From positions 1-64,000 of the IMG/VR virus record IMGVR_UViG_3300026097_000876: a DNA stretch of 64,000 nucleotides; one strand, given 5' to 3'. Shown here in pieces: positions 856-63,920 of the stretch. Numbering within the stretch: position 1 is the stretch's first letter; each line of letters opens with the position of its first letter. A model generated the notes under the pieces. The model made no database searches, had not been told where the DNA came from, and saw only the letters and a list, made by a program, of their open reading frames with translations. The position numbers and the translations under genes are program-made.

Positions 856-901
856 ATCACAATAGGGGAACTCTAAGAGCGCAAACCCTAATGCCTATAC
901 T

Positions 902-1074: not shown

Positions 1075-1075
1075 C

Positions 1076-1120
1076 TCTAACTGTTATACACAGTATAAAG
1101 TCGTGTTATTGTTTTGTCAA
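1076..1120 (-). promoter_or_regulatory. Sigma70-type early promoter
   Basis: TTGACA-17 nt-TATACT followed by GTGTATAACAGTTAG. Confidence 0.8.
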
Positions 1121-1121
1121 C

Positions 1122-1221
1122 CTTATTATAAAGCACACTACGGAATCGAACCGTTTTTTGTGTTGTAACACCTATCGCCACGACCTAGTAGCTACTATAG
1201 GCTAGTGTGCTTTATAATAAG
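1122..1221 (-). ncRNA. tRNA-like element lacking a canonical anticodon arm and CCA
   Basis: 19-bp closing stem, TA-GCCT...AGGT D-like arm, ACGG-TTCGATT-CCGT T-arm. Confidence 0.55.
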
Positions 1222-1321
1222 TGCTGGGCTATCCCCAGCTTGACCTATCTTGTAACATCCAGGCCGCCGCCCATTTATTTTTTATAGTGCTTGTAGGTTC
1301 GCGTTACCATTTGCACTTGCA

Positions 1322-1355
1322 TTAAAAAACCCCGGAGTATTTCTACTTCGGGGTT
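1322..1355 (-). terminator. Intrinsic terminator (part of putative attenuator)
   Basis: AACCCCGAAGTA-GAAA-TACTCCGGGGTT followed by U run. Confidence 0.8.
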
Positions 1356-1381
1356 CCGTATAATCTGTTAACTTAACTAAA

Positions 1382-1480
1382 CTATACGGAACTCCCACGA
1401 TCATAAATCCAACCACAGAACATCCCCGCCGGATTCGACTGGACCTCTGTTGTGTTCTTATGCATCGTTTTGTTCATCAT
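1382..1480 (-). CDS. Putative 32-aa leaderless leader peptide MMNKTMHKNTTEVQSNPAGMFCGWIYDRGSSV
   Basis: ATG 6 nt after the -10 hexamer; stop codon lies in the 5' arm of an antiterminator hairpin. Confidence 0.55.
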   Translation of the reverse strand: MMNKTMHKNTTEVQSNPAGMFCGWIYDRGSSV

Positions 1481-1486
1481 AGTGTT

Positions 1487-1516
1487 ATATTAACCTCGTT
1501 GACTCTGTTTGTCAAC
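1487..1516 (-). promoter_or_regulatory. Sigma70-type promoter with overlapping GTTGAC-N7-GTCAAC palindrome
   Basis: TTGACA-17 nt-TAATAT; dyad at 1498-1516. Confidence 0.65.
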
Positions 1517-1546
1517 CTCTTTTTACCTTTTTATTTATCTTTTTTC

Positions 1547-1621
1547 TGGAGCGGGTAGCGAGAATCGAACTCGCATCTAAGCGTTGGCAACGCTTTGTAA
1601 TAACCATTATACGATACCCGC
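1547..1621 (-). tRNA. tRNA-Gly(GCC)
   Basis: AAGCG-TTGCCAA-CGCTT; U73; CCA. Confidence 0.95.
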
Positions 1622-1628
1622 AATATTT

Positions 1629-1937
1629 TTAAATACGCTGTCCTGGTTCATAAAACTGAAATGTCTTGCCAGCGGCAAACACACAGGCTATGTCATTATC
1701 TTTATTCACAACTATAAAGCTCCAAGACTGTGTTTCTGTGTTTATCCACAGTGACGAATACAGTAAGCTGTCATTTCCCTCAGCAATGCCTTCACTTAGA
1801 AATATTAGTTCTTCGTTGTACTCTTGTTTTATAAAGTCAAGTACTATCTCTGTTTTAGCGCAATCAACTGGAACGTCATATACTTCTGCTTTTGCTGGTG
1901 AGGCGATGAGCAAAAACATCGCCAATAGGTATTTCAT
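1629..1937 (-). CDS. Small secreted hypothetical protein inside the tRNA cluster
   Basis: GGAGAG RBS before ATG 1937; signal peptide MKYLLAMFLLIASPAKA. Confidence 0.7.
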   Translation of the reverse strand: MKYLLAMFLLIASPAKAEVYDVPVDCAKTEIVLDFIKQEYNEELIFLSEGIAEGNDSLLYSSLWINTETQSWSFIVVNKDNDIACVFAAGKTFQFYEPGQRI

Positions 1938-1950
1938 TTTTCTCTCCAAA

Positions 1951-1978
1951 TGAGTAGTTTTAAAACTTACTCAGGTTT
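1951..1978 (-). ncRNA. Small H-type pseudoknot motif, copy C
   Basis: S1 AAAC/GTTT, S2 TGAGTA/TACTCA; ends 3 nt before the RBS of the next gene. Confidence 0.55.
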
Positions 1979-2200
1979 ACCTTTCCTGGGCACCATTTGC
2001 TCAATTGTTTTACAAGGGGAACAAAACCCTTAAAAATTTTTACACAATGCAAAGAGTGAGTGGTTAACCAATGCATCGACCTAGCTACTTGATAAACTAT
2101 GTCTATCTTTCACTACTTTCAGGCGGTTCAGGCCTTTATCGCCGTCTCCCTAAGGAGCTTGTGTCTAGGTCTTTTTATAGTAGTACCGAATCTACATATT

Positions 2201-2277
2201 TGGTGCCGCTGGAGGGAGTCGAACCCCCAACCTTCTGGACCTAAACCAGACGCCTCTGCCAATTGGGCTACAGCGGC
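2201..2277 (-). tRNA. tRNA-Leu(UAG) with short variable loop
   Basis: TCTGG-TTTAGGT-CCAGA; A73; 77 nt; 5-nt variable region. Confidence 0.85.
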
Positions 2278-2291
2278 AAATATCATATTTA

Positions 2292-2382
2292 TGGCGGAGA
2301 TGGAGGGATTCGAACCCTCGATACGCTATTAACGTATACTCCCTTAGCAGGGGAGCGCGATCGACCACTCTGCCACATCTCC
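2292..2382 (-). tRNA. tRNA-Ser(GCU)
   Basis: CTCCC-CTGCTAA-GGGAG; long variable arm; G73; CCA. Confidence 0.95.
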
Positions 2383-8868: not shown

Positions 8869-11011
8869 AGTATTGTCCTAACGCTCGATTTGCTGAAACA
8901 GTGTTTATAGTATTCATTATACTTGACCATTCGTCAGTTGTCAATCCCGTAACTTGTGCTACAATGCCATTGTCTATATTTGTTACATCTTGTATCTTGT
9001 CAAATTCAAAGTCATTAGCCCAAGCAATGTCTGCTAGTTTATAAATCTGTTTTAAACTATAGCGAATACGTTGCATAGTTACATTTAACTCATCCTCATC
9101 TCTAGCTTCAGGTTGAGCCGAATTTGTCTTAGAACGTGTTTTATTTTTGCCTTCTTCAATATCGTTAGCATTAAATTGTGTTCTGCTACTATTACTATTA
9201 GCGTCTTTGTTTTTATCTTGTAACAGTGCAATAATGTTATCATCAATTTCATTTTGTTTAATACAAGATCCAATGCGATCAATATGGTTGGTAATATCTG
9301 ACAGGAAACGTTTTGAAATTTCTGCACCTGACATAATGTTCCATGCATTACCGTCATAATCATATACATCGCTTACTTCTAACCATTCACTAATTACTGA
9401 TTCAGCGGTACGTCCTGTAGTGTCTGCAACACGCTCGCAATAATCGTACACTACACTAACAAAACGTTCAGGCGCATAATCAAATACTACTACACTTTCT
9501 TTTCCGTCTGCCGGCGACTTACAACGGAAACTACCTTGAAAGTAATCTGCCGCACTCTTGTCGTTATTAATTTGATGTACACTCCACCATTCAGGTACAG
9601 TAGTGCCTTCTAAGAAGCGTCCGCATGTGAGTGTAATAGTGCCGGCGCCACCGTCATGGTCGTTGCGAGAAATTATATCTTTTACTTTTTGTATATTCTT
9701 AACGCCTTTTCCACTTGCATTAATAATCTTACGTTTACAAAAGAACGGATGTGCTTCTAATGCTTGTGCAAATAACCCAATTGCTTCCACGTTATCAGGC
9801 AATACAAATAGTGTATGACGGCTAAGTTTGTCAGCAACATTACTAAATCTTGATGGTGGTTTTTTAAAGTTTTTCATAATAAATGTAATAAACTCATTTA
9901 CACCCATTACATTTTTAAAAGAACCATTTTCAGTTGCAAACAATTTAGAAAATGTAAATCCTTCGTCGCCGAGTAGCTGTTTTACTTTTTCCGGAACATT
10001 AACTAATGCATAGTTGATGTCAGCACGTTTGCGAAACTGATCTGTTAAGAAGTTGTCTTCGTTTGCTTCTAAAAGTTCTTTCCGTATATTTTGTTCGTCG
10101 ATATAATCAAAATTATATGTATCTTCTGAAGCGTATCGTCCACTTAGCATAGTCTTGTACGGAGTTCCGCTTAATTCAACTTTAAGTTTAAATTTTAGAT
10201 TACTCCAAAGACGTTGTGTGTTGTCGGTTGATGTAGCATAATGTTGTTCATCAAAAAATACACTGTCCCATTGTGTGTCAAACATTTGTTTTAAGAACTT
10301 ATTATTACTACCAAAATGTTTATTGATAAACTGTAAACTAACAAACACAACATCAGTGCCTGTAAATTCCAAAGACTTAGTTGTTTTATAGTTGTGGTAT
10401 TTCCAGCCAGCATAGTCAATGTGGTTCTCTTCTCCACCCGGCAATAAACTTGCCCAACTATCATTAACACCTACTTTTGCTGTAACTACTAAAATTTTCT
10501 TAGCACCAAGTGCTCGTGCAATTTCATAGCTAATACGACACTTACCGGCTCGCATAATAGCATTTATAAGCAAGTCACTAGATACCGAACTACGAGTTAC
10601 GGCCCAGTCGATAATGTCTTGTTGATAATCAAAACTATTCCAATCTTCTAGAGCTTCTACGCCATTAATAAGACCGTTGAGTACTTCTCGAACTGTTTTA
10701 CTAGCATCCTTTGCTGTTATGCTGTCAGGAAAATCAAACCATTCACGGTTCTTATCGTCGCGACTTTTAAAATAACCTTTGCGTTGGAGAGTTTTATGTA
10801 ATGCAATATCAGTAATATGCGTAGGAACTTGTCTTGAATAAATTATTTCTAATTTTTCAGAATTCGATGTGCTATCTTGTTGCTCAACCCGTTCTTCTGC
10901 TGTAAGCATAGTCTGTCCAACTTTAAGTTTTACATTGAAAACTTCACCGTCGACTGTTGCTACGCTTTGTTTGCTTTGACTTTTTGTAGTGTAAAGATAG
11001 ATTGTGTTCAT
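8855..11011 (-). CDS. T5orf172/GIY-YIG-like domain fused to SF2 (Res-type) helicase
   Basis: IYLY...KVGQT...REWF N-terminus; MRAGK, FFDEQH, LSGTPY, FLEGTTVPEW. Confidence 0.8.
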   Translation of the reverse strand: MNTIYLYTTKSQSKQSVATVDGEVFNVKLKVGQTMLTAEERVEQQDSTSNSEKLEIIYSRQVPTHITDIALHKTLQRKGYFKSRDDKNREWFDFPDSITAKDASKTVREVLNGLINGVEALEDWNSFDYQQDIIDWAVTRSSVSSDLLINAIMRAGKCRISYEIARALGAKKILVVTAKVGVNDSWASLLPGGEENHIDYAGWKYHNYKTTKSLEFTGTDVVFVSLQFINKHFGSNNKFLKQMFDTQWDSVFFDEQHYATSTDNTQRLWSNLKFKLKVELSGTPYKTMLSGRYASEDTYNFDYIDEQNIRKELLEANEDNFLTDQFRKRADINYALVNVPEKVKQLLGDEGFTFSKLFATENGSFKNVMGVNEFITFIMKNFKKPPSRFSNVADKLSRHTLFVLPDNVEAIGLFAQALEAHPFFCKRKIINASGKGVKNIQKVKDIISRNDHDGGAGTITLTCGRFLEGTTVPEWWSVHQINNDKSAADYFQGSFRCKSPADGKESVVVFDYAPERFVSVVYDYCERVADTTGRTAESVISEWLEVSDVYDYDGNAWNIMSGAEISKRFLSDITNHIDRIGSCIKQNEIDDNIIALLQDKNKDANSNSSRTQFNANDIEEGKNKTRSKTNSAQPEARDEDELNVTMQRIRYSLKQIYKLADIAWANDFEFDKIQDVTNIDNGIVAQVTGLTTDEWSSIMNTINTVSANRALGQYFDHQ

Positions 11012-21224: not shown

Positions 21225-22385
21225 TTAGTAACCAACAGTTGATTTTTCGTACACAGCATTATGTGTCTGTGTACATCTAACAAATGTAGTACATTTGCTA
21301 AGATTCTTTAGTTTTACTGCGCCAGCGTAAGTACAAGTACTACGCAACCCACCAAGAATACCTTGAACAGTATTACCCACTGTTCCTCGGTAAGGCACAA
21401 GAACTTCTCTTCCTTCACTGCTTCTATACTCCTTAAGTCCGCCAAAGTGTTTGTCATTGGCTGCTGTTGAGCTCATGCCATAGAACTGTACAAACTTCTT
21501 TTCTTCAATAACACGACGACCTTCATCCCAGTCAGTTCCGCTCATCTTAGGAACAGGACGTAGCTCATCTGTGGCATAGCGTTTGACAATTACTTCTCCA
21601 CCACCTTCATCGTGTCCGGCAAGCATGCCGCCCAGCATTACAAAGTCAGCGCCAGCGGCAAATGCTTTGGCTACGTCACCAGGGCAAGTGCAACCCCCAT
21701 CAGCAATAATATGGCCGCCGAGTCCGTGAGCCGCATCGGCACACTCAATAACAGCCGAGAGTTGAGGATAACCAACACCTGTCTGAATGCGAGTAGTACA
21801 CACACTACCAGGACCAATCCCAACTTTAACAATATCTGCTCCTGCAAGAATTAACTCCTCTGTCATTTCACCAGTAACTACATTACCGGCGATGATTACA
21901 ATATTTGGATACGTCTTACGCATCTCTGACACAAAGTCACGAAAGCGATTTGAATATCCATTTGCTACATCAATGCAAACATATTTTAGATTGCCGTCTG
22001 CACGATCATATACGTCTTTAAACTTGTTCCAGTCACTGTCATTAATACCAATGCTCATTGCTACATGATTAGTGCGTAGATATTCGTCTGTGTCAAAAAA
22101 GTCTACAAGCTCGTCTGCCGTGTATGTTTTTACAAGACAGGTAAACATACCCAAACGTGCAAGTTCATCTGCCATTTCAAACGTACCAACACCGTCCATA
22201 TTGGCCGCCATAATAGGAATTCCTTTATAGTGAGCATTTAAAACATTGTCAGGAAATTCTATTTCGGAGTTACGAAATGTATATTCACGCACCAACTCAA
22301 CTTCTTTACGACTACCAAGTGTGCTACGTTTAGGACGTATCAGCACATCTTTGTAATCTAGTTTGCTTTCGGTTTCGATTCTCAT
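21225..22385 (-). CDS. guaC: GMP reductase
   Basis: [39 protein letters not shown]. Confidence 0.95.
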
Positions 22386-31645: not shown

Positions 31646-31917
31646 TATAATGTGTGTCCTGTTCCGTTGTATCCTGTTTCTTCTAAATATGCTGTCAGCT
31701 GATCATAGCCTCCAATATATGTACCTTGTAAGAAAATTTGAGGAGCCGTTCTAGGCTGTGGTAGCCCTTTTGCTTCAAATAAATCAAACAATTCTTGTGG
31801 TTGAATGTCTTCACCAAGTTCTTTAACTACATAAGTCAATTCGCGATCGTCTAATAGTTTTTTTGCTTTTACACAATTAGGACACGAAGGCTTACTGTAT
31901 ACAATATTCTCACTCAT
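31645..31917 (-). CDS. Glutaredoxin
   Basis: CPNC active site; TAPQIF; YIGGY. Confidence 0.9.
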   Translation of the reverse strand: MSENIVYSKPSCPNCVKAKKLLDDRELTYVVKELGEDIQPQELFDLFEAKGLPQPRTAPQIFLQGTYIGGYDQLTAYLEETGYNGTGHTL

Positions 31918-33017
31918 AGTGAGAATCCCTTCAAACTGTTTTCGTCTACATCCTGTTTAATACCGCCAATGATATATGATTCAACTTCTGTTTCTTGAGG
32001 AGCAACCTGCAAGCCTGAACTCGACAACCAGTGCTGTGTCCACGGTAGCGGATTAGTGTTGATTGGACGATCGTAAATAGTGTTGTATCCTAGCGCCTTG
32101 AGTCGTTTGTTAGCAATAAATTCTACGTAATGATGCAAAAGTTCTTCATTAAGTCCGATAATCGCACCATCTTTGAATAGATAGTTAGCCCAAGATTTTT
32201 CTTCGTTGACACAAGTCTTCCACATTTCGTATACTTCGTCTTCGCATTCTTTGGCAATCTCGGCCATTTCTGCATCGTCTTTGTTCTTAATCCAATTTTT
32301 AAGAATTTGTGTACTTAGGTTCAAGTGTGTTGCTTCGTCACGGGCAATAAGGCTAATAATCTTAGCAGACCCTTCCATCATCTTAGATTCGGCAAAAGAA
32401 AACGTACAAGCAAAACTAACATAAAATCTTAGTCCTTCTAAGATATTAACATTCATCATTGCAAGGAATAATTTTTTCTTTACGTCTCTTAAACTACCTT
32501 CTTTCCTATGGAACCAACCGTCAGCTGCCTGCGTAAATGCATCGTAATTTTTAGTTACACTTACCGCACGTTCAATAATCTTTTCATCGTCTAGGATAGT
32601 ATCGAATACTTCTGCAGGGTCAGCATACACGTTCTTCATAATGTGTGTGTAGCTGCGTGAGTGAATTGTTTCAAAGAAGTCCCAAGTAACAATACAGCCT
32701 TCTAACTCAGGTAAACTTACATAAGGAAGGAACGCTAAACTAGGGCCGCGACCTTGTACTGAGTCTAACAGTGTTTGATACTTTAGGTTAGCGGTAAAGA
32801 TATGCTTCTGCTCTGGACGGAAGTTGGCAAAATCTGATCGATCCTTTTGCAGACTTACTTCTTCCGGGCGCCAAAAATAGCCCAGCATAGTTTGATTAAG
32901 TTTATCAAACTCCGGAAATTTAAACGTGTCATAACGCTGTGTATTTTGATCTGCTCCGAAGAACATGTTCTGTTTAGTAAAGTCTACTTTATCTTGATTG
33001 AATACGGTTTTTGCCAT
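31914..33017 (-). CDS. nrdB: Ribonucleotide reductase class Ia beta subunit
   Basis: FWRPEEV, ETIHSRSY, LEGLRFYVSF, RDEATH; internal TTGACA/TATAAT promoter at ~33039-33067. Confidence 0.97.
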   Translation of the reverse strand: MAKTVFNQDKVDFTKQNMFFGADQNTQRYDTFKFPEFDKLNQTMLGYFWRPEEVSLQKDRSDFANFRPEQKHIFTANLKYQTLLDSVQGRGPSLAFLPYVSLPELEGCIVTWDFFETIHSRSYTHIMKNVYADPAEVFDTILDDEKIIERAVSVTKNYDAFTQAADGWFHRKEGSLRDVKKKLFLAMMNVNILEGLRFYVSFACTFSFAESKMMEGSAKIISLIARDEATHLNLSTQILKNWIKNKDDAEMAEIAKECEDEVYEMWKTCVNEEKSWANYLFKDGAIIGLNEELLHHYVEFIANKRLKALGYNTIYDRPINTNPLPWTQHWLSSSGLQVAPQETEVESYIIGGIKQDVDENSLKGFSL

Positions 33018-33068
33018 TATATTTTCCTTATGTCCTATATTATATCTTACTTTGTATTATTTGTCAAG

Positions 33069-35375
33069 TCAGATTGCACAACTATCGCAAACTTCATCAT
33101 CGTCTGTATCAATTGTTTCTGTTACAGCAAGAGGTTCTTGTGTTGGTTCTTCGGCTATTTCACCGTCTGTCTTATAATCATATGTGTTTTGATAGTAACT
33201 TGTCTTCCAACCAAACTTGTAAGTATTCAGTAAGTCTTTTATCATAACACTCATTGGCACTTCGTTGTTTTCAAAGTGCGTTGGATTATAACTCCAGTTG
33301 CCTGAAATTGCTTGGTCAAAGAACTTTTGCATTACAGCTACAATATTAATGTAACCTTCGTTACTAGGCATATCCCATAGTAAAGTGTAATGTTGCTTGA
33401 GGCTTTGATATTGCGGGACAACTTGTTTCAAAGGACCTTTCTTTGATTTCTTAACACTTAGATATCCCCTAGGCGGCTCAATTCCATTTGTTGCGTTAGA
33501 TACAACACTTGAACTTTCTGACGGCATCTGTGCAGACAACGTGCTGTGTCTAAGACCGTGCGTTTTAATATCATTTCGCAAACTTTCCCAGTCATAGTTT
33601 AACTTGTTTTCTACGATAGTATCAACATCTTTTTTATAAGTATCAATTGGTAAAATACCGTCTGAATACTTTGTGCGATCAAAATATTCGCAAGCGCCTC
33701 GCTCTTGCGCTAACTTATTTGACGCTTTTAGCAAGTAATACTGGAATGCTTCTGTAAGATCGTGTACTAACTTCCATGACTGTTTATCGCTATACTGTAC
33801 TTGATTTTTAGCTAGATAATGAGCAAGTCCGATATACCCTACACCAAGTGAACGTCTTGCTTTAGTCGACTTTTCAGCCGCTAAGATTGGATATCTTTGA
33901 TAATCAATAATTTCTTCTAGAGCACGAACAGCAAGTTCACACAGCTCGTCTAAGTCATTCAAATCTTTAATTATGCCTACATTAATGGCACTTAGAATGC
34001 ACAGTGCAATCTCGCCCTCTGGATCATCAATATGATTTAATGGTTTAGTAGGCAATGTAATTTCTTGACACAAGTTACTCATGTACACTGTGTCTTTGAA
34101 CGAACTGTGTGTGTTAGCGTGGTCTACGTTCATGATGTAGATACGTCCTGTCTCTGCACGTTCTTTGACCAATGCGGAAAACAACTCCATCGCTGGTATA
34201 CGTCTCTTTTTAATACTTGTAGCACGTTCATACTTTTCGTATAGTTCTTGGAATTTGTCTGCATCGCCAAAGTATGCTTCATACAAACCAGGAACATCAT
34301 GTGGCGAGAAAAGAGTAATATCTCCCCCAGATAACAATCTTTCATACATTGTTTTGTTAAGTTGGATTGAATAGTCTAGCTTGCGCACACGGTTGTCTTC
34401 TGTGCCTTTGTTGTTCTTTAGCACAAGGATGTCTTCAATCTCTTGATGCCAAAACGGGAAGTGTGTTGTAGCTGATCCGCCACGTACACCGTTTTGTGTA
34501 CAGCAACGTACTGTACTTTCGAATTTTTTAAGGAACGGAATGATTCCTGTGTGCGCTACTTCTCCGCCTCTGATTTTTGAGTTGACGCCTCTGATGCGGC
34601 CTGCATTGATGCCGATACCCGCTCGCTGTGCAGTGTATCTACCAATCGACATATCGCTAGCGAAGATACTATCAAGGGTGTCGTCACTGTCAACAAGGAC
34701 GCAACTAGCAAACTGTCGCACAGGCGTTCTGACCCCGGCCATGACTGGTGTCGGGATATTGATTTTAAAAAGTGAGGTCGCATCATAGTATCTCCTTACA
34801 TAATGCATACGTGTTTCTGCAGGATAGTTTGCAAACAACGTAGCTGCGATCATCATGTACATGTGCTGAGGAGTTTCAAATATTTCGCCTGAGGAACGAT
34901 CTTGACATAGGTACTTGTCTACTACTTGGCGAAGTCCAGCATAGGTAAAGTTTTCATCACGCTTGTGACGAATATAACCATCAAGTGTTGCAAGTTCTTC
35001 TGCGGTGTACTTCTCGAGAATTTCTGCATCATACACGCCGCGTTCGATATTTCTAGAAATCATTTCAGCTAGAGATAGCTTTTCAAACCCGCCAAACACT
35101 TCCTTGTACACTCCGTACAGCAACAATCTTGAAGCGGCATATTGATAATTAGGAGTTTCTAAACTGATTAGATCATTTGCTGACCTAACTAATAAATCTT
35201 GAATTTCCTTAGTTGTCATTCCGTCCGAAAATTGAATTCCAGCATTCATTTGGATCAAACTACTACTAACGTTAGCTAGTCCCTCACATGCAAAATTAAC
35301 TACTTTATGGATTTTTTGGATATCTAGGCGTACCCTATCGCCATGACGTTTTACAATGCTAAGGTCTTGTTTCAT
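33069..35375 (-). CDS. nrdA: Ribonucleotide reductase class Ia alpha subunit with ATP cone
   Basis: PTPVMAG, FASCVL, SNLCQEI, ALCILSA; uninterrupted. Confidence 0.97.
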   Translation of the reverse strand: MKQDLSIVKRHGDRVRLDIQKIHKVVNFACEGLANVSSSLIQMNAGIQFSDGMTTKEIQDLLVRSANDLISLETPNYQYAASRLLLYGVYKEVFGGFEKLSLAEMISRNIERGVYDAEILEKYTAEELATLDGYIRHKRDENFTYAGLRQVVDKYLCQDRSSGEIFETPQHMYMMIAATLFANYPAETRMHYVRRYYDATSLFKINIPTPVMAGVRTPVRQFASCVLVDSDDTLDSIFASDMSIGRYTAQRAGIGINAGRIRGVNSKIRGGEVAHTGIIPFLKKFESTVRCCTQNGVRGGSATTHFPFWHQEIEDILVLKNNKGTEDNRVRKLDYSIQLNKTMYERLLSGGDITLFSPHDVPGLYEAYFGDADKFQELYEKYERATSIKKRRIPAMELFSALVKERAETGRIYIMNVDHANTHSSFKDTVYMSNLCQEITLPTKPLNHIDDPEGEIALCILSAINVGIIKDLNDLDELCELAVRALEEIIDYQRYPILAAEKSTKARRSLGVGYIGLAHYLAKNQVQYSDKQSWKLVHDLTEAFQYYLLKASNKLAQERGACEYFDRTKYSDGILPIDTYKKDVDTIVENKLNYDWESLRNDIKTHGLRHSTLSAQMPSESSSVVSNATNGIEPPRGYLSVKKSKKGPLKQVVPQYQSLKQHYTLLWDMPSNEGYINIVAVMQKFFDQAISGNWSYNPTHFENNEVPMSVMIKDLLNTYKFGWKTSYYQNTYDYKTDGEIAEEPTQEPLAVTETIDTDDDEVCDSCAI

Positions 35376-35406
35376 TCTTTTCTTTTTCCTTTTTATCAAA
35401 AAATAT

Positions 35407-54410: not shown

Positions 54411-55613
54411 ATGCTAGATATAAAACCGTTTCAAGATATTATAGATCAACTAAAGGGTCAAGGCAACTATCGTGTTTTCAACGACATTGTTAGAGAACGT
54501 GGTAGTTTTCCAGAAGCTATTTGGTATGGTCCATACAATATCAAGAACATAGTTAATTGGTGTTCAAATGATTATCTAGGAATGGGACAACACAAGGTTG
54601 TTATTGACAGTATGTATACAGCCCTTGATCAAACAGGAAGCGGATCAGGCGGCACACGTAACATTGGCGGCACTAGTCATTACCACGTAGCTCTAGAACA
54701 CGAATTAGCAAAGTTACACGCTAAATCAGGTGCTCTATTGTATACCAGTGCCTACGTTGCCAATGAGTGGACACTCATCGCTCTAAGCAAGATCATTCCC
54801 GACATTGTGTTCCTTTCAGACTCAAAGAATCATGCTTCTTTGATACAAGGGATCAAACACAGTGGTGCTGACAAGATGATTTGGCAGCACAATGATATGA
54901 ACGATTTAGAAAAGAAATTACAGGAAGTTTCCGCACAGAACAAAGTCGCCTGCATTGTGTTCGAGTCCGTGTATAGCATGGACGGCGATGTCTCTCCTAT
55001 TTCTTGTGTCTGCGACCTAGCTCAACAATATGGAGCAATGACCTACATTGATGAAGTCCACGCAGTAGGCTTGTACGGGAGTACTGGTGCAGGATATTTA
55101 GAGAAACTGGGTATACAGGATCGGGTAGACATCATCAATGGAACGTTGGGCAAGGCTTTTGGAGTACAAGGCGGCTACATTGCAGGTGAAAGGACTGTCA
55201 TAGACGCAATCCGAAGTGTAGCCAGTGGATTTATATTCACTACCAGTATGAGTCCTGTGATTTGTGCTGGTGCTTTGGCCTCTATAAAGTATCTAAAAGA
55301 TCACAACGAACTAAGAGAGCAACAACAAACGCAGGTACAAAAACTTAAAAACAATTTAATACACGAAGGTATTGAAATACATGCAAGCGCCTGTACTCAT
55401 ATTGTGCCTGTTATGGTACGTGACCCTGTGCGTTGTAAAACTATCAGCGACGAACTATTAAACGAATATGGAATTTATTTACAACCGATTGGCTGGCCTA
55501 CGGTTGCAAAAGGAGAGGAGAGATTGCGCATTGCTCCTACACCCTTTCACACAGACGCTATGATAAGCGATCTAGTAGATGCGCTAGTAAAGGTTTTTAA
55601 AAATGTCAATTAA
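54411..55613 (+). CDS. hemA: 5-aminolevulinate synthase (Shemin/C4 pathway)
   Basis: [39 protein letters not shown] (PLP Lys). Confidence 0.93.
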
Positions 55614-56019
55614 AAAAATGTTATGGTATGTATTGGGCATGGGCTCGTTAGGTATGGCCTATGTAGGATTTGTAGTTCCAGGCATACCATTTTCGATCTT
55701 CCTTGTGTTTGCAGCCTATTGTTTTGCAAAGTCGAGCAAGAAGATGCACGATTGGATATACAATCACAAACACTTTGGTCCGTTCCTTACTAATTGGACA
55801 GAGAAGAAAGTATTTCCTACCAAGATGAAATACATGATGGTTGCTGTAATGAGTTCAAGTGCAGCCTTCCTATGGTTTAGCACCGGCAATATCAAAGCAA
55901 CACTGTGGAGCGCAGGCTTTATGGCGCTGGTCGCTCTATGGGCTTGGAAATTTCCCGGAAGTGTTGCTGAATATGAAAAGCGCAAGAAACTAGGCAAGCG
56001 CATCGGTTGGATACGCTAG
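55603..56019 (+). CDS. ybaN: YbaN/DUF454 membrane protein
   Basis: [24 protein letters not shown]...HKHFGP. Confidence 0.85.
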
Positions 56020-56525
56020 AGGTAAGCTGTCCAGCTAGGATGTGCTATCTGCATAGACAACTGTTTGCGTTTGTTTACTAGATCATAGTAGTCAGGCGCA
56101 TAAGGAGCACGTCTTGGTTTCATATTGGTTTTGTTGCCTTTGCGACTGTTGCACGGTCCGCATGCCGCTACAATATTAGTCCACGACGTCTTGCCGCCTT
56201 TGCTTACAGGAGTCACGTGATCAAGTGTTAGATTACTCCTACCATAGGGTGTCCCGCAATACTGACAGGTATATATATCACGTATAAAAAGATTTTGTTT
56301 AGAAAAACGTGGCCTTGCACGGCGCTTCATCATTTCTTTAAGCATGATTACCGCTGGTACACGAGTCTCCCAGGATGGTGAACTTACTATCCAATCGTCA
56401 TACCATTCAAGCACAGTGCACTTGTCTAACCACATATAGGTGACCGCTTCCTTCCACTGTACAGCACTTAGCGGAAGATACGATACTGGTTGGGCATCAG
56501 CGTTCAAAACTAAAACGTCAGACAC
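56016..56525 (-). CDS. HNH endonuclease
   Basis: RDIYTCQYCG, TLDHVTPVSKGG, NIVAACGPCNSRKG. Confidence 0.9.
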   Translation of the reverse strand: MSDVLVLNADAQPVSYLPLSAVQWKEAVTYMWLDKCTVLEWYDDWIVSSPSWETRVPAVIMLKEMMKRRARPRFSKQNLFIRDIYTCQYCGTPYGRSNLTLDHVTPVSKGGKTSWTNIVAACGPCNSRKGNKTNMKPRRAPYAPDYYDLVNKRKQLSMQIAHPSWTAYL

Positions 56526-56614
56526 TTTTTACTTCTCCAATGTGTCAAAAACTCTTGTTTACTAGTATATTTATAGATTTTTTTGACTGTTAATAATATT
56601 GTAATACTTTACAG

Positions 56615-57181
56615 TCACACCACAGTGTTGTCAATTAACAACTGATCCATCATTTGATCACTGGCCAACTGAATACCCATCTTCCACTGATCTTCTTCAT
56701 CTTCGTTGTAAAAAATTTCGTGATTGGGCTCTACCAACAACCAAGCCTTGTGTTGATACAGTTCTTCCTGAAGCTGTTTGACTCCCCAAGTGCTCATTCC
56801 GGCTATCAGTCTCCAACAGGCAGGTAAGTTGCCATCTACCATCTTGTCCAGCATTAGTTCGTCTGAACTAATACAATTGCCGTGGGTCACAGGAATAGTG
56901 TTTGTGCTGTTCCATTCATCAGTGTGCAGGAGTATTAGGCTCTGTTCACCCACTGGACCGCCTCTGTACACACTGCCAGTGGCACCTGTGTTGTAGATGC
57001 CACGTAGGCCCTGAAGCCTGTCAATGGTGAGATAACTGGGCTTGTTGAGAATCAATCCAAACACTATGAGATCTGTTTGTTCATAAAGATAAACCACAGT
57101 CTGTGCAAAAGTTGGATCTCGCATGGTGCCAGGGCGAGCAATTAATAGCTTGCCTTTGAACTTGGTTTCAACCTTGGTCAT
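56615..57181 (-). CDS. YqgE/AlgH (DUF179) family protein
   Basis: GKLLIARP..RDPTFAQTVVYL, GLILNKP, VYRGGPV, QLQEEL...AWL. Confidence 0.85.
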   Translation of the reverse strand: MTKVETKFKGKLLIARPGTMRDPTFAQTVVYLYEQTDLIVFGLILNKPSYLTIDRLQGLRGIYNTGATGSVYRGGPVGEQSLILLHTDEWNSTNTIPVTHGNCISSDELMLDKMVDGNLPACWRLIAGMSTWGVKQLQEELYQHKAWLLVEPNHEIFYNEDEEDQWKMGIQLASDQMMDQLLIDNTVV

Positions 57182-60382: not shown

Positions 60383-60439
60383 CAGTCCAACAAGCGCGAA
60401 GCGTCCAAAAAAAATTTCACACTCAGTGTAAATATCTAT

Positions 60440-60661
60440 ATGTACATAGAGTTCACACAAGTTAAAAACGCTGGCTTTCATCGACACACACTGCGCAATG
60501 ATATCTTCGACAAGCTGACTAGCATACATACTCCCTATAGTGTAGACAGTGACATTCCTGATGAGCTGGTTGTGTACATGGCAGATCGATACTATACTAT
60601 ATTCTGTATACAATGGAATCCCCACAGTAAGATCTACTATGCATACACAGCACACAAGTAA
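60440..60661 (+). CDS. Small hypothetical protein
   Basis: 73-aa ORF after a GTAAATA motif. Confidence 0.4.
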   Translation: MYIEFTQVKNAGFHRHTLRNDIFDKLTSIHTPYSVDSDIPDELVVYMADRYYTIFCIQWNPHSKIYYAYTAHK

Positions 60662-60664
60662 GAG

Positions 60665-60949
60665 CGCATATACAAAGGCCCCGCACAAGAGAGCTTTATA
60701 TATACTCGCAAGCTCGCATATACAAAGGCCCCGCTGCTAGCTATACACAAAACAAAATTTCCTTGAGGCCCCGCTGCTAGTATCACGGTATCACACACAC
60801 TCTATACAGTGTAGATGCTTGCCGTAGAAAGACTGTGTGTCTAGGTTGATTTTATAGTGTGACTAGGTTGAATCTAGCGTGGGAAGAACCGTAAAAAGCG
60901 TTTGAAAGAAAGGTAAAAAGTATTTGAGAGAAAGGTAAAAAGTATTTGA
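60665..60949. repeat. Direct repeats: CGCATATACAAAGGCCCCGC x2, AGGCCCCGCTGCTAG x2, GAAAGGTAAAAAGTATTTGA x2
   Basis: Positions 60665/60715, 60726/60766, 60908/60930. Confidence 0.85.
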
Positions 60950-61355
60950 ACTATGCCTCTCGTCACCACGGTCAAGAAATTTTTTTTTGGCTATAGATCG
61001 TGCCAGAACCGTAATGCGAATAATTCTTATTTAACATTAGGCCTACAGTATTGGCACCGTAAACCCACCATTAAACTGTCTGAGAACTCGGCCTCTGTGG
61101 GGATAGATCTCTTACTAGCTATACAGTATACAGAGTGTGTGTATAGTATAGTGTAGCATGTTATACAATGTGACCGTTAGCGTAGTGTACGGTGTGTAGT
61201 GTATGGTATAGTGTGTATAGCTACTATAGTGCATAGTGACTTATTGCATACTGTGTGTTTGGCTGTGTGATCTAAATGCGAATTATTTGCATTTAGGCCT
61301 CTGCACTTTTTGTGTATAACTTGTGTATAAGTGTGTGCGAGAATATTGTGTGTAA

Positions 61356-61712
61356 AATCAAACACTTAGCAAATCTTGTGTAAAATCAAGCACTTAGCTC
61401 TGTGCATAAGTCCGCCGTTCGCCGCCTCGTTTGCGTTCGTCCCGTGTAAGTTATTGTTTTTGTTGAGGATTTTGTGTTCGTTTTGTTCTTTCTAAACAAG
61501 CACTTATGTGTTGTGGATAAGCTGTGGATAACTTTTGCGAGGGGTGCGCATAATGTGTATTATGTTAAATGAGAATTGGATGAGGAACGTGCGCTAAGTG
61601 TTTGATATTGTTGAGGTGGGGCCGTGCGCATTTAACATAATACCGGCCGTGTGCGCATATAATATATTATGTTAAATGAAGGTGGGGCGACTTGTGGACA
61701 AGCTGTGGATAA
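61356..61712. promoter_or_regulatory. Cluster of DnaA boxes and IHF consensus sites
   Basis: TGTGGATAA at 61512, 61523 and 61704, TGTGGACAA at 61693; WATCAANNNNTTR at 61356, 61384 and 61595 (minus strand). Confidence 0.75.
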
Positions 61713-61782
61713 CTTTCGGTTCGCGCACCCTCCCTCCTTGTACTCCGGTCTCTTCGTTCCCGCTTGTATGTTTTGTGCCTTT

Positions 61783-61828
61783 GCCCTAACTGTTATATAC
61801 AGTATACGGCCTCGCCGCCAAAAAGTCA
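61783..61828 (-). promoter_or_regulatory. Leftward sigma70 promoter pointing into the DnaA-box cluster
   Basis: TTGACT-17-TATACT-GTATATAACAGTTAGG; no convincing downstream ORF. Confidence 0.7.
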
Positions 61829-62002
61829 ACCTTCTGAGGTCTTGTAAGTCATTGTTTCGTAAGGGAAAAATAAATTAAAAAAAGTTTTTTTCCTCTGTGT
61901 TTTCAATAGCTTACAAAAAAAATAATGCTTGCTTTTTTGCGCAAACGAGGCTATACTGCTTATACAGTAAAAAATTAACTTAAACTATATAGAGGGCTAT
62001 AT

Positions 62003-62368
62003 ATGCAAAACTTTACACAAGCAGCACTTGCAGACGTGCAAGCACTAGTTAACACTTACGCTAATATTGCGGGCGATTACGAAGCAACGCTGTTATGCGG
62101 CGTATGGCACTACATGTGCGACAGCGGCATATACACAGACGCATTTAGCGAAGCAGATGCGGAGTATGTAGAAGCGCACTACGACAACAATGTGCAATAC
62201 TACAACGACGACGATTGCGGCTACACAGACGCATTTTATGCTGTAATATTTGACGACGATAAATTGCAATGCAATGCAGTGTTACAAGCACAAGATGCAA
62301 TTGCAAACAAGCATAATTTGCATAACGAAGATGTTGCACGTATGTGTATGCAACTAGAAGCAAGTTAA
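62003..62368 (+). CDS. Acidic early protein
   Basis: TTGCTT/TATACT promoter, AGAGGG RBS; 21 D/E versus 3 K/R. Confidence 0.75.
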   Translation: MQNFTQAALADVQALVNTYANIAGDYEATLLCGVWHYMCDSGIYTDAFSEADAEYVEAHYDNNVQYYNDDDCGYTDAFYAVIFDDDKLQCNAVLQAQDAIANKHNLHNEDVARMCMQLEAS

Positions 62369-62448
62369 TTGTAAAAAACACTTGACAGCAGCATGCTTTT
62401 GTAGTATGCTGCTGCATATACACTAAAAAATTGCAAAGAGGGCAAACT

Positions 62449-62901
62449 ATGCAATACAACAAGATTTTTACAAACTGCGCTGTAGTAAGCGACGAGAATT
62501 TTGACTTGCTTACAGCAGAACAGCTAGAAGCATTTACACAAGCGGAACGTGCTTTTGTGCTTGTGTTTTTAGCAGACACACTTGCAAACTTGACACAGGT
62601 TAACGCAGACTGTGCAGTAGAAAACGACAACTACTTTGTGCGACTAGCGGATGCGCAGGAGGTTATGCAAAATTTGCAAATGCTGTACGACACACTAGAC
62701 GACAGCGACGACTGTACAAATATACAGTTTACGCTAGCGGATGCGGGTGCTGCGCTGTGTAGTTACGACACAGAATACAGGGAATGCATAGCGGAGCAAT
62801 TTGAAGACGCATGCGACAACGCTGCTAAACTTGCAAAGCAAACTGGCAACACAAACGCAGACTACAGCACACTTGCTGTGCGTGTGCTGTGTAGTTATTA
62901 A
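62449..62901 (+). CDS. Acidic early protein
   Basis: TTGACA/TATGCT promoter 62382-62410, AGAGGG RBS; 26 D/E versus 7 K/R. Confidence 0.75.
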   Translation: MQYNKIFTNCAVVSDENFDLLTAEQLEAFTQAERAFVLVFLADTLANLTQVNADCAVENDNYFVRLADAQEVMQNLQMLYDTLDDSDDCTNIQFTLADAGAALCSYDTEYRECIAEQFEDACDNAAKLAKQTGNTNADYSTLAVRVLCSY

Positions 62902-62973
62902 AAAGGGGTTGACAAATGTGTTTATGTGTGCTACTATGTACACATAAACAATTAATTGCAAAGAGGGCACGCT

Positions 62974-63177
62974 ATGCAAAAACTAAACGAAAAAGCACTA
63001 CAGCAGTGGAACGCAACACGGCGTTTTATGCGTACACTAGACGAAGCGCAGCTGCATTTATTAATAGCGGCGCTAGACGGCGACAACAAGTTGCAAGTTA
63101 CGCAAACGCTAGTAGACAGCGCATATGACGCAATAGACGACAACATGCGCAAACAATATGCACAACACTTAAAATAG
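62974..63177 (+). CDS. Small early protein
   Basis: TTGACA/TACTAT promoter 62909-62937, AGAGGG RBS. Confidence 0.75.
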   Translation: MQKLNEKALQQWNATRRFMRTLDEAQLHLLIAALDGDNKLQVTQTLVDSAYDAIDDNMRKQYAQHLK

Positions 63178-63241
63178 GGGTTGACAACTGTGCATATTGT
63201 GTTATACTGTATGCACAGTTAAACAATATAGAGGGCACTAT

Positions 63242-63502
63242 ATGCAAAACACTACATACTATCCTGCCGCAGTCGCAAACGTTATAACACATTACGCACA
63301 AGCAATTGCACGTGCTAGTTATGACAGCGTAGTGGAAGCAGGCGACTACAGCATAACAGACAACTGTGCAAAAATACAGTACCTGTTGTCTGCTAGTGCG
63401 CAACACACCTCAGTTAAAAGTCTAGCAGTTGCCGCACTAAACAGCGCAGAGGATACAGTGCTGCGCGAATGCATGTACACACAATTAATGCAACACGCAT
63501 AA
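63242..63502 (+). CDS. Small early protein
   Basis: TTGACA/TG-TATACT promoter 63181-63208, AGAGGG RBS. Confidence 0.75.
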   Translation: MQNTTYYPAAVANVITHYAQAIARASYDSVVEAGDYSITDNCAKIQYLLSASAQHTSVKSLAVAALNSAEDTVLRECMYTQLMQHA

Positions 63503-63635
63503 TCTAAATAAGAATCATTTGCATTTAGGAGGCTGTAAATAATTACAGTCTTCTTTTTGCAAATTAGGGGTTGACAGGCGCAACCTTTGAGACTATACTG
63601 TATAAACAATGAAGCATTAGAGAGAGGGTTTTGAA

Positions 63636-63920
63636 ATGCGAGTAGTTGAGCAATATGGCATGTTTACCGACGCTGGTGACAAGATGGTAGACCGCATAGT
63701 ACGTGCCGCACTCCAGTTGGGGCAAGAGCAGGCAGCTACCAATGCCGATGTGTGGGGATTTGCATATCGCGAGTTGGAGAAGCTCCAGACCAGCTTAGAG
63801 TTCTCGGAAGCAACAGACACCGTAGTACGTGAGGAAGTGTTCTCAGCACTGTGGGACAACCTTCCAGGATTTAATCTAACAGAAGAAGAGTACTGGTTCT
63901 TTGTTGAGGAGACAGCGTAA
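63636..63920 (+). CDS. Small early protein
   Basis: TTGACA-17-TATACT promoter at ~63571-63599, AGAGGG RBS. Confidence 0.75.
   Translation: MRVVEQYGMFTDAGDKMVDRIVRAALQLGQEQAATNADVWGFAYRELEKLQTSLEFSEATDTVVREEVFSALWDNLPGFNLTEEEYWFFVEETA

What the first reader, a model, noticed from the sequence alone, without database searches (positions are those of the whole stretch)
61905..63262. 1.36 kb with zero TC and zero CC on the coding strand, spanning three whole early transcription units
Seen: by line-by-line reading there is no TC or CC on the plus strand from 61905 to 63262, where on the order of 100 would be expected at local composition. TT, CT, GA and GG all occur normally, so the rule is strand specific. 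It covers promoters, UTRs and codon junctions and forces proteins with no Pro and with Ser only as AGY, so it is not codon bias. It relaxes in the next gene and is gone by 63640. Known: YC is the context of UV C-to-T mutation and of several cytidine deaminases; DarT-type toxins modify ssDNA motifs; removing YC from one strand also removes every palindrome containing GA, GG, TC or CC (GATC, GGCC, CCGG, TCGA, GANTC, CCWGG). Inference: these earliest genes are under strong selection from an unidentified strand-specific DNA/RNA attack, or form a restriction-proof first-injected segment that probably encodes the countermeasure.
Basis: seen in the sequence. Interest (0 to 1): 0.9.

Follow-up and report, generated by a model that had tools for sequence, protein, structure and literature searches.

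The report
Phage early genes lacking every YC dinucleotide
A small cluster of early genes in an uncultured marine jumbo phage, and in its diverged relatives, contains not one pyrimidine-cytosine (TC or CC) step on its messenger strand; this is exactly the two-letter signal that the bacterial termination factor Rho grips on RNA, so these messages are probably invisible to Rho.

Summary
The + strand has no TC or CC from 61904 to 63262 (1,359 nt; about 116 expected; next-longest gap 131 nt). The sequence was assembled independently in at least four datasets.

It recurs in about 11 related metagenomic phage contigs as compact 2-8 gene islands around one conserved protein family (g2, 496 homologues, 118 of 120 without proline). 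Across 24 island genes there are 0 YC where about 299 are expected. The rule follows the sense strand, including minus-strand genes, and matches transcription units: YC occurs in promoter spacers but not from about the transcription start.

It is not a symmetric DNA rule, since dispensable GA/GG are tolerated. It is not restriction avoidance, since palindromes are enriched. T4, T7 and PA5oct early regions lack it.

5'-YC-3' is the dinucleotide bound by each cleft of Rho's primary RNA-binding site. Best explanation (about 0.5): cis-encoded, Rho-blind immediate-early transcripts. This would be an extreme, motif-exact form of the recently described Rho-avoidance bias.

Main rival: an unknown YC-specific RNA- or ssDNA-acting enzyme. 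The host is unknown, probably an alphaproteobacterium. No prior report was found.

The parts
61904..63262 (+). YC-free island: no TC or CC on the sense strand over 1,359 nt
   Evidence: 0 observed, about 116 expected; next-longest gap in the window 131 nt
61929..61957 (+). Promoter P1 (TTGCTT-17-TATACT), first promoter of the island
   Evidence: Regex scan; nearest upstream YC at 61903
62003..62368 (+). g1: 121 aa, very acidic (D+E 21, K+R 3), no Pro, 0 YC; an ORFan
   Evidence: no homologue among 5.8 billion proteins; no Pfam, PHROG or NCBIfam hit
62382..62410 (+). Promoter P2 (TTGACA-17-TATGCT), embedded in hairpin 62383-62416
   Evidence: hairpin dG -21.2 kcal/mol, z -4.4
62449..62901 (+). 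g2: 150 aa, acidic all-alpha protein, 0 YC; the conserved core gene of the island in all relatives
   Evidence: 496 homologues; 118 of 120 have no Pro; AF2 pLDDT 87; no fold match in PDB or BFVD
62909..62937 (+). Promoter P3 (TTGACA-17-TACTAT), embedded in hairpin 62919-62950
   Evidence: hairpin dG -19.0 kcal/mol, z -4.0
62974..63177 (+). g3: 67 aa, 0 YC, no Pro; a homologue follows g2 in L110
63181..63208 (+). Promoter P4 (TTGACA-16-TATACT), embedded in hairpin 63186-63220
   Evidence: hairpin dG -18.8 kcal/mol, z -3.6
63242..63502 (+). g4: 86 aa, transitional gene; the first YC is at codon 7, 10 YC in all
63517..63564 (+). Terminator-like hairpin followed by a U-rich run; probable end of the P1-P4 read-through unit
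   Evidence: dG -22.7 kcal/mol, z -6.8; no other + strand terminator-like site inside the island
63571..63920 (+). Promoter P5 and g5 (63636-63920, 94 aa): the first ordinary-YC early gene (21 YC); its promoter has no hairpin
   Evidence: z -0.4
60400..61900 (.). Gene-free repeat region upstream of the island, with a cluster of DnaA-box-like sites (61311-61712) and a leftward promoter (61829-61801)
   Evidence: independent gene callers find no gene here

Best explanation
The island is a set of immediate-early transcription units, read by the host sigma-70 RNA polymerase, whose RNAs have been purged of every 5'-YC-3' dinucleotide. YC is the ligand of each of the six clefts of the primary RNA-binding site of termination factor Rho. 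A nascent RNA without YC offers Rho nothing to load on. These genes can therefore be transcribed to the end even when the RNA is not, or not yet, covered by ribosomes.

The neighbouring early genes use the same promoter type but have normal YC content, so they would stay subject to Rho. That would give a built-in order of immediate-early then delayed-early expression, like the order Rho imposes on T4 in vitro.

Shown here: the YC absence; its conservation through sequence divergence; its sense-strand and transcript-limited nature; its asymmetry.

From the literature: Rho's YC specificity, and that coding strands can evolve to avoid Rho.

Inferred: that Rho is the selective agent, that the host has Rho, and that these genes are the earliest expressed.

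Speculative: that an island product, such as the always-present g2 protein, is the factor that later relieves Rho or another early block. That would explain why its own message must be immune.
For: (1) Exact motif match. Only TC and CC are missing, while AC and GC are over-represented and CT and TT are normal. Rho's primary site has six clefts, each taking one YC; neighbouring YC must be at least 7 nt apart; rut sites are 60-90 nt long (PMC5314796; PMC12360218; PMC13323073).

(2) Sense-strand rule. Minus-strand genes are YC-free on the minus strand (L003 9004-9783, L010, L012). The long ORFs always lie on the YC-free strand.

(3) Transcript boundaries. YC occurs inside promoter spacers (L012, L010, L112, L113) and directly after a -10 box (L003), but not from about the start site onward. 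The L003 minus-strand unit is YC-free from the start site to just past its terminator hairpin. L113's island starts after an upstream terminator.

(4) Untranslated parts are YC-free too (5'UTRs and intergenic read-through). There is no + strand terminator inside the island.

(5) Real asymmetry. 0 YC against about 299 expected in 24 genes from 7 lineages, while 162 dispensable GR are tolerated.

(6) Conservation. The g2 gene has 0-2 YC in every lineage despite 52-89% protein identity. The ORFan g1 is equally YC-free, so the property belongs to the transcript and not to one gene family.

(7) Graded states exist. Partly depleted neighbours keep about 5-11 YC clusters per kb, too sparse to fill a rut-sized window.

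(8) Precedent. Rho avoidance shapes coding-strand composition (PMC13323073). This lineage's ordinary genes are 55.5-57.0% purine, against 52-54% in T4, T7 and PA5oct.

(9) In T4, Rho restricts in-vitro transcription to immediate-early RNA (PMC2988021).

(10) Host hints point to a Rho-bearing proteobacterium. The phage carries a 5-aminolevulinate synthase whose bacterial homologues are almost all alphaproteobacterial. SD motifs precede 54% of ORFs. Rho is present in over 90% of bacteria (PMC11347177).
Against: No experiment links these RNAs to Rho, and the host is unknown. If it were a cyanobacterium, which lacks Rho, the explanation fails. Some auxiliary genes resemble cyanophage genes.

Rho needs several spaced YC, so strong depletion should suffice. 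The absolute zero over more than 1 kb, bought at the price of all proline, looks more like protection from a single-hit enzyme.

The genes have strong SD sites, so translation should already shield them.

Rho is nearly universal, yet T4, T7 and PA5oct early regions show nothing similar. That hints at a lineage-specific agent.

Neighbouring genes with the same promoter type are not YC-free, and the reason for singling out these genes is only inferred.

Two L003 genes lack YC on both strands, which Rho evasion by the sense RNA alone does not explain.
Confidence: 0.5

Rival explanations
1. An unidentified enzyme cuts or modifies single-stranded RNA at YC. It could be a host abortive-infection or immune effector, or the phage's own host-shutoff ribonuclease. 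The island messages, possibly including the inhibitor of that enzyme, must survive it and so carry no target site.
For: The absolute zero, rather than mere depletion, fits a single-hit agent better than a multi-site reader. Sense-strand and transcript-limited boundaries fit any RNA-level agent. The trait is restricted to one phage lineage and absent from T4, T7 and PA5oct, as expected for a lineage-specific agent. Strong hairpins between the units could act as 3' stabilisers.
Against: The searches made here and my own knowledge turned up no bacterial or phage ribonuclease or RNA-modifying enzyme with YC specificity. A phage-encoded version would also destroy the phage's own later messages, which carry 63-80 YC per kb. 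Isolated YC bunches are tolerated inside otherwise clean units (L021 9729-9736, L003 8454-8456).
Confidence: 0.22
2. A single-strand-specific cytidine deaminase or nuclease with TC/CC preference (APOBEC-like, or similar to the dC-specific T4 endonuclease IV) attacks the displaced non-template DNA strand of these very heavily transcribed genes. Target sites on that strand have been selected away or mutated away.
For: TC and CC are the classic contexts of ssDNA cytidine deaminases (own knowledge). The non-template strand equals the sense strand, so strand-following and transcript-limited boundaries would also be expected. TT and CT are mildly over-represented, odds 1.26 and 1.10.
Against: No such anti-phage system was found. 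A TC lies in the non-template strand inside the open-complex region of the L003 minus-strand promoter, the most exposed ssDNA, and is tolerated. The proteins show no Leu/Phe excess that saturating C-to-T change would cause. Neighbouring genes with equally strong promoters are not protected.
Confidence: 0.1
3. The relevant strand is the template. The phage DNA carries a base modification at G in GA/GG context (for example a 7-deazaguanine type) that hinders the unmodified host polymerase. Genes that must be read first therefore have a template strand without such sites.
For: A YC-free sense strand means a GR-free template strand, so strand-following and unit boundaries are equally compatible. 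Some phages modify G in short contexts (own knowledge).
Against: No modification genes were seen in about 100 kb of annotated sequence from this lineage, although most of the genome was not examined. Ordinary early genes with the same host-type promoters have normal GR on their templates. To my knowledge, host polymerases transcribe heavily modified phage DNA such as T4's.
Confidence: 0.05
4. One reading: a restriction-proof, first-injected leader segment.
For: GATC, GGCC, CCGG, TCGA and GANTC are necessarily absent. The island lies next to a gene-free repeat region and heads a long array of small genes in this phage.
Against: Palindromes are enriched, not depleted: the region has the highest 4-bp and 6-bp palindrome counts in the window. 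Removing a few sites does not require removing every YC on one strand only. The rule flips with gene orientation. Contigs of the same phage are permuted. In L112 and L113 the island follows ordinary genes.
Confidence: 0.02
5. Avoidance of UV photoproducts, since (6-4) lesions form mainly at TC and CC, in a sunlit marine phage.
For: The motif match is from my own knowledge, and the environment is marine (sample sources).
Against: Lesions block transcription on the template strand, which keeps 79 YC per kb (GA+GG on the + strand). TT and CT dimer sites are not avoided. Only 2-8 genes per genome are affected.
Confidence: 0.02

Closest known systems
Sequence-encoded Rho avoidance: purine-rich coding strands in bacteria with runaway transcription (PMC13323073, 2026)
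   Same: The coding strand is shaped so that nascent RNA lacks what Rho binds. The effect acts on codon choice and amino-acid content. This phage lineage's ordinary genes also show the mild form, 55.5-57% purine.
   Different: The known case is a genome-wide statistical bias of a few percent in bacteria. Here a single dinucleotide class is excluded absolutely, in a few phage genes with sharp edges, without lowering C content: C is 20% and is simply always preceded by a purine. That paper does not mention phages.
T4 immediate-early versus delayed-early transcription and Rho (PMC2988021)
   Same: Host-polymerase early promoters. Rho limits which early RNAs are completed before phage proteins or translation intervene. 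The layout is an array of small genes, each with its own strong promoter.
   Different: In T4 the distinction comes from position relative to Rho-dependent terminators and from translation. T4 early genes are not YC-depleted: obs/exp 0.74-1.14, longest run 111 nt.
Phage anti-Rho and antitermination factors (lambda N and Q, HK022 put RNA, P4 Psu; host Rof)
   Same: The presumed purpose is the same: letting phage transcription escape Rho.
   Different: Those are trans-acting proteins or discrete RNA elements that modify the polymerase or Rho. Here escape would be passive and in cis, through the absence of the binding motif. g2 matches neither Psu nor Rof by sequence or fold.
Restriction-site avoidance and early anti-restriction genes (T7 ocr, T5 first-step-transfer region)
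   Same: Small, very acidic early proteins at the head of an early gene array; some palindromic sites are absent.
   Different: Palindromes are enriched overall. The depletion is one-stranded and at the dinucleotide level. There is no similarity to Ocr/ArdA-type folds. T7's early region has no such run.

Membership tests
Rho-evading (rut-free) transcript | The nascent RNA lacks the YC dinucleotides that Rho's primary binding site needs | tested here: met
   0 YC in 1,359 nt; 0 against about 299 expected in 24 island genes; Rho's specificity from PMC5314796
Rho-evading (rut-free) transcript | The depletion applies to the transcribed strand and the transcribed segment only | tested here: met
   It follows the gene's strand. 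YC is present in promoter spacers but not after about the start site, and the run ends near terminators or the next promoter. GR is not comparably depleted.
Rho-evading (rut-free) transcript | The host encodes Rho | tested here: inconclusive
   The host is unknown and no relatives occur in genome assemblies. The alphaproteobacterial-type 5-aminolevulinate synthase and SD usage suggest a proteobacterium. Rho is in over 90% of bacteria but absent from Cyanobacteriota.
Rho-evading (rut-free) transcript | The RNA fails to activate Rho and transcription resists Rho-dependent termination | not testable with these tools
   Needs Rho ATPase and termination assays, or bicyclomycin reporter tests
Restriction-site-avoiding leader segment | Palindromic recognition sites are under-represented on the duplex | tested here: not met
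   107 four-bp palindromes against 74 +/- 13.5 elsewhere; 32 six-bp against 18 +/- 5.4; 12 of 16 four-bp palindromes remain possible and are present
Restriction-site-avoiding leader segment | Lies at the first-entering end of the virion DNA | tested here: inconclusive
   Assemblies of the same phage are permuted. In relatives the island follows ordinary genes. Virion ends are not available.
Known Rho inhibitors (Psu, Rof/YaeO) | Sequence or fold similarity of an island protein to Psu or Rof | tested here: not met
   The g2 profile against PDB sequences gives no hit below E 0.04 and none to Psu or Rof. Foldseek against PDB gives best E 1.6. g1-g3 have no Pfam or NCBIfam hits. g1 and g3 were not modelled.
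DNA-mimic anti-restriction proteins (Ocr, ArdA) | Acidic protein with a DNA-mimic fold | tested here: not met
   g1 and g2 are acidic, but the confident g2 model (pLDDT 87) matches no solved or viral predicted structure
Deaminase (APOBEC/DddA-type) mutational footprint | Loss of TC/CC with matching gain of TT/CT, and Leu/Phe-shifted proteins | tested here: inconclusive
   TT odds 1.26 and CT 1.10. There is no marked Leu/Phe excess. Complete absence even at conserved positions argues for selection rather than mutation pressure alone.

The most novel reading that the evidence does not exclude
The selective agent is not Rho. It is a still-unknown enzyme that cuts or modifies single-stranded RNA (or the displaced DNA strand) at pyrimidine-cytosine steps, either a host immune effector or a phage shut-off enzyme. 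The island, built around the ubiquitous g2 protein of novel fold, would encode its inhibitor, whose message has to be target-free to be made at all.
Probability: 0.25. Interest if true: 0.92.

Novelty: new variant of a known kind. Interest (0 to 1): 0.85.

Why it matters
If the Rho reading is right, these are the first natural messages that escape the main bacterial transcription-surveillance factor simply by lacking its binding motif. It would be a passive, cis-encoded third way, beside antitermination proteins and Rho inhibitors.

It would show that Rho pressure on invading DNA is strong enough to remove an amino acid (proline) from whole proteins. It would offer a genomic signature for finding the very first genes a phage needs. 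It would also give a simple design rule for Rho-proof synthetic transcripts.

It turns an open question into a direct assay: what decides immediate-early versus delayed-early expression in large phages that rely on the host polymerase?

If Rho is not the agent, the pattern is a footprint of an unknown nucleic-acid-targeting system with dinucleotide specificity, and the g2 family (about 500 variants in marine metagenomes) is the obvious candidate counter-measure.

Tried and rejected
- **Composition or codon bias.** Rejected. The same proteins with genome codon usage would carry 8-19 YC each, and junction permutations also create YC.
- **Assembly or sequencing artefact.** Rejected. There are identical independent assemblies, and diverged relatives share the trait.
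- **Symmetric dsDNA rule masked by the genetic code.** Rejected. 162 dispensable GR are tolerated against 0 YC.
- **Restriction avoidance.** Rejected. Palindromes are enriched.
- **Property inherited with one gene family.** Rejected. The ORFan g1 and many unrelated small genes share it.
- **Generic trait of host-transcribed early genes.** Rejected. T7, T4 and PA5oct lack it.
- **Clustering of residual YC as evidence for a multi-site reader.** Significant against a thinning null (0.68 against 0.95). On inspection it is mostly overlapping CCC/TCC triplets and zone edges that I had included, so it is not used.
- **Function of the proteins.** PHROG, Pfam, NCBIfam, PDB sequence search and two fold searches gave nothing.
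- **Rfam on 60.3-64 kb.** Nothing.
- **Cultured relatives.** No DNA or protein match for the island in 50,697 phage records.
- **Host from genome assemblies.** No g2 relatives. The best aminotransferase hits (76-81%) lie on short contigs in MAGs of inconsistent taxonomy, probably mis-binned phage DNA.
- **CRISPR PAM avoidance, primase-site avoidance and UV.** Considered and set aside. These act on either strand, follow replication direction, or concern the template strand. The rule instead follows gene orientation and the sense strand.
Full report
**1. The observation**

A direct count confirms the finding. On the + strand there is no TC or CC between 61904 and 63262. The gap is 1,359 nt, and the next-longest in the 64-kb window is 131 nt.

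All 270 cytosines in the stretch follow A or G. AC and GC are over-represented (odds 1.49 and 2.19), while CT and TT are normal. Base composition predicts about 116 YC, and both edges are sharp in a sliding count.

The depletion acts at three levels:
- Amino-acid content: no Pro in 338 residues, against 3.4% in the phage's other proteins.
- Codon choice: Ser only AGY, Phe only TTT, Ile only ATT/ATA. No NCC or NTC codon is used.
- Codon junctions: all 62 C-initial codons follow a codon ending in A or G. For g2, 0 of 2,000 synonymous-position permutations reach zero YC.

The stretch holds promoter P1 (61929-61957) and three genes, each with a sigma-70-type promoter and an AGAGGG ribosome-binding site: g1 (62003-62368), g2 (62449-62901) and g3 (62974-63177). 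It also holds promoter P4 and the first 7 codons of g4. g4 is partly depleted (10 YC) and g5 is ordinary (21 YC).

**2. What the window is, and why this is not an artefact**

The window is the first 64 kb of a 262-kb viral contig. It carries:
- a 10-tRNA cluster;
- ribonucleotide reductase;
- GMP reductase and 5-aminolevulinate synthase.

Nothing in 50,697 phage records matches closely at the DNA level. A replicative helicase from a relative (L021) is about 51% identical to that of Pseudomonas jumbo phage PA5oct.

The identical island occurs in independent JGI, ENA and Logan assemblies, on contigs of 44, 279 and 332 kb that are permuted relative to one another.

Independent gene callers give the same g1-g5 genes. 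They also find a 1.6-kb gene-free region upstream, and the island genes head an array of at least 8.7 kb of small + strand genes.

**3. Relatives**

g2 belongs to a family of 496 metagenomic proteins, none named. Of the 120 retrieved, 118 have no proline.

DNA context was obtained for about 11 distinct contigs. Every one has a YC-free or nearly YC-free island:

| Locus | YC-free run(s) on the sense strand |
|---|---|
| L003 | 1,259, 429 and 776 nt on +, and 780 nt on − |
| L110 | 1,583 nt |
| L113 | 1,460 nt |
| L011 | 1,356 nt |
| L019 | at least 1,286 nt |
| L021 | 1,116 nt |
| L010 | 863 nt |
| L112 | 258 + 394 nt |
| L023 | 442 + 485 nt |
| L012 | 271 nt |

- The g2 homologue has 0-2 YC in each lineage, at 52-89% protein identity.
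- Edges are sharp. In L110 successive genes carry 0, 0, 0, 0, then 10, then 75 YC per kb.
- Some neighbours are partly depleted, at 10-39 per kb against 60-110 for ordinary genes.
- g1 is an ORFan with no relative among 5.8 billion proteins, yet it is just as clean. The property therefore belongs to the transcript or position, not to one inherited gene.
- The island genes are a varied pool of small, mostly acidic, proline-free proteins, many starting M-Q-N/K/Y.

**4. Which strand, which segment**

In L003, L010 and L012 the island genes on the minus strand are YC-free on the minus strand. In every segment of at least 250 nt the long ORFs lie on the YC-free strand.

The boundaries match transcription units:
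- YC occurs inside promoter spacers (L012 two TCC; L010 CC; the next promoters after the islands of L112 and L113).
- YC occurs directly after the -10 box of the L003 minus-strand unit, but not from about the start site onward.
- That L003 unit stays clean to just past its terminator hairpin.
- L003's second + unit ends right after a hairpin and T-run.
- L113's island begins after the terminator of the upstream gene.

In the window no + strand terminator-like site lies inside the island. A strong hairpin with a U-rich tail follows g4 (63517-63564; z -6.8). The internal promoters and UTRs are thus probably part of read-through RNA.

**5. Is it truly one-stranded?**

Removing GR from a coding strand would cost Asp, Glu, Gly and Trp. 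Removing YC costs only Pro. A symmetric duplex-level rule could therefore mimic sense-strand specificity, so I tested this.

In 24 island genes from 7 lineages (2,472 codons) there are 0 YC against about 299 expected. By contrast, 162 GR beyond those forced by D, E, G and W codons are present. Their ratio to expectation is 0.67, against 0.91 in ordinary genes, and several genes, g2 included, show no GR depletion at all. The asymmetry is real.

Two L003 genes (9509-9751 on −, 10006-10257 on +) are exceptions that lack both motifs. They remain unexplained.

**6. What it is not**

- Restriction avoidance fails. The region has the highest palindrome counts in the window (4-bp 107 against 74 +/- 13.5; 6-bp 32 against 18 +/- 5.4), and 12 of 16 four-bp palindromes remain possible and are present.
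- A first-injected end is not supported. The assemblies are permuted, the island lies behind ordinary genes in L112 and L113, and L003 has oppositely oriented units.
- UV lesions would matter on the template strand, which keeps 79 YC per kb.
- It is not a general trait of early genes read by the host polymerase. The longest YC-free runs are 104 nt in T7's early 12 kb, 111 nt in T4's first 50 kb and 187 nt in PA5oct's 50-kb early region. Per-gene obs/exp in T7 and T4 is 0.55-1.14, and 1-kb windows of the PA5oct region give 0.66-1.05.

**7. Mechanism**

A sense-polarity, transcript-limited, dinucleotide-level rule implies a reader of single-stranded nucleic acid.

The one well-established bacterial factor that reads exactly 5'-YC-3' on nascent RNA is Rho:
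- Its primary binding site has six clefts, each taking one YC.
- Neighbouring YC must be at least 7 nt apart.
- rut sites are 60-90 nt long (PMC5314796; PMC12360218).
- E. coli Rho recognises up to six CC or UC dinucleotides (PMC13323073).

That 2026 paper shows that avoiding Rho shapes coding-strand composition and codon use where polymerases outrun ribosomes. It does not mention phages.

This lineage's ordinary genes show the mild form of the same signature: 55.5-57.0% purine, against 52.2-53.8% in PA5oct, T7 and T4.

In T4, adding Rho in vitro restricts transcription to immediate-early RNA (PMC2988021).

I therefore propose that the island RNAs are Rho-blind immediate-early messages, and that the neighbouring ordinary-YC early genes remain under Rho control.

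Host hints fit a Rho-bearing proteobacterium:
- The 5-aminolevulinate synthase scores 567 bits against a cutoff of 339, and its bacterial homologues are almost all Alphaproteobacteria.
- SD-like motifs precede 54% of ORFs, against a 15% background.
- Perfect TTATCCACA boxes occur upstream of the island.
- Rho is absent mainly from Cyanobacteriota, Mycoplasmatota and some Bacillota.

**8. Weak points**

- Rho needs several spaced YC, so an absolute zero paid for with all proline is more than the model requires. A single-hit enzyme would explain zero more naturally.
- Rho is universal but the trait is lineage-specific.
- The genes have good ribosome-binding sites.
- Why only these genes are protected is inferred, not shown.
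- The host is not identified.

For these reasons I give Rho evasion about 0.5. An unknown YC-specific RNA-acting enzyme gets about 0.22. A non-template-strand deaminase or nuclease gets about 0.1, and a template-strand modification effect about 0.05.

Searches found no known anti-phage enzyme with YC specificity and no prior description of YC-free phage genes.

**9. The proteins**

g2 folds confidently (pLDDT 87, pTM 0.83) into an all-alpha domain. It matches nothing in the PDB or among viral predicted structures, and no Psu or Rof by sequence. g1-g3 have no family hits.

Their function is unknown. That g2 is the counter-measure whose message must itself be immune is an attractive idea, but it is untested.

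**10. Verdict**

This is a real, extreme and conserved sequence phenomenon that has apparently not been reported before. Its most likely meaning is cis-encoded invisibility to Rho, which can be tested directly with standard Rho assays and reporters.

Noticed in passing
window 60400-61900: A 1.5-kb gene-free region full of direct and inverted repeats. Seven of the window's 28 DnaA-box-like sites (at most 1 mismatch), including 3 of 5 perfect TTATCCACA, lie in 61311-61712 as tandem pairs. There are also 22-nt tandem repeats at 60884-60949, and a strong leftward promoter (61829-61801) reads into the region. It may be a replication origin or a long non-coding RNA. Rfam finds nothing.
   Followed up: partly
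window 62383-62416, 62919-62950, 63186-63220: Each internal island promoter sits inside a strong hairpin that pairs the -35/-10 spacer with positions +1 to +12, leaving the -10 box in the loop (dG -19 to -21 kcal/mol, z -3.6 to -4.4). The stem sequences differ between promoters. The same arrangement occurs in L110 and L021. The non-island promoter at 63571 has none. Function unknown.
   Followed up: partly
L003 9440-9761 and 9905-10329: Two genes flanking a divergent promoter region (9509-9751 on the minus strand, 10006-10257 on the plus strand) lack YC on both strands. Their K/N/T/Q-rich proteins contain no Asp, Glu, Gly, Trp or Pro at all.
   Followed up: partly
window 54411-55613 (+): Phage-encoded 5-aminolevulinate synthase (TIGR01821, 567 bits). 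Its bacterial homologues at 51-59% identity are almost all Alphaproteobacteria. This is an unusual haem-pathway auxiliary gene and the best hint to the host.
   Followed up: partly
window 61270-61297 and 63502-63529 (weaker copy at 61008-61035): A 28-nt, internally palindromic element (ATCTAAATGCGAATTATTTGCATTTAGG, copies 89% alike) occurs upstream of the island and again right after g4, bracketing the island plus g4 like a cassette.
   Followed up: no
L003 8454-8470, 8885-9003, 9783-9895: The YC-free units of L003 are separated by short G+C-rich, YC-rich non-coding pieces that share motifs such as ggccccg...gtaagg. These may be small structured RNAs or protein-binding sites.
   Followed up: no
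whole window and relatives (L021, L023, L110, L113): Ordinary genes of this phage lineage have unusually purine-rich coding strands (55.5-57.0%), against 52-54% in T4, T7 and PA5oct.
   Followed up: yes
window 18-2382 (-); 21225-22385 (-); 31914-35399 (-); 56016-57181 (-): Ten tRNA genes in one cluster, a GMP reductase, class Ia ribonucleotide reductase subunits (NrdA about 70% identical to cyanomyovirus NrdA), an HNH endonuclease and a YqgE/AlgH-family protein.
   Followed up: partly
island gene starts in the window, L003, L010, L019, L021, L110: Many island genes begin ATG CAA AA(N), giving M-Q-N/K/Y, 5-8 nt after a GAGGG(C) Shine-Dalgarno motif. A search with that 17-mer found 14 viral contigs, of which only some carry islands.
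   Followed up: partly
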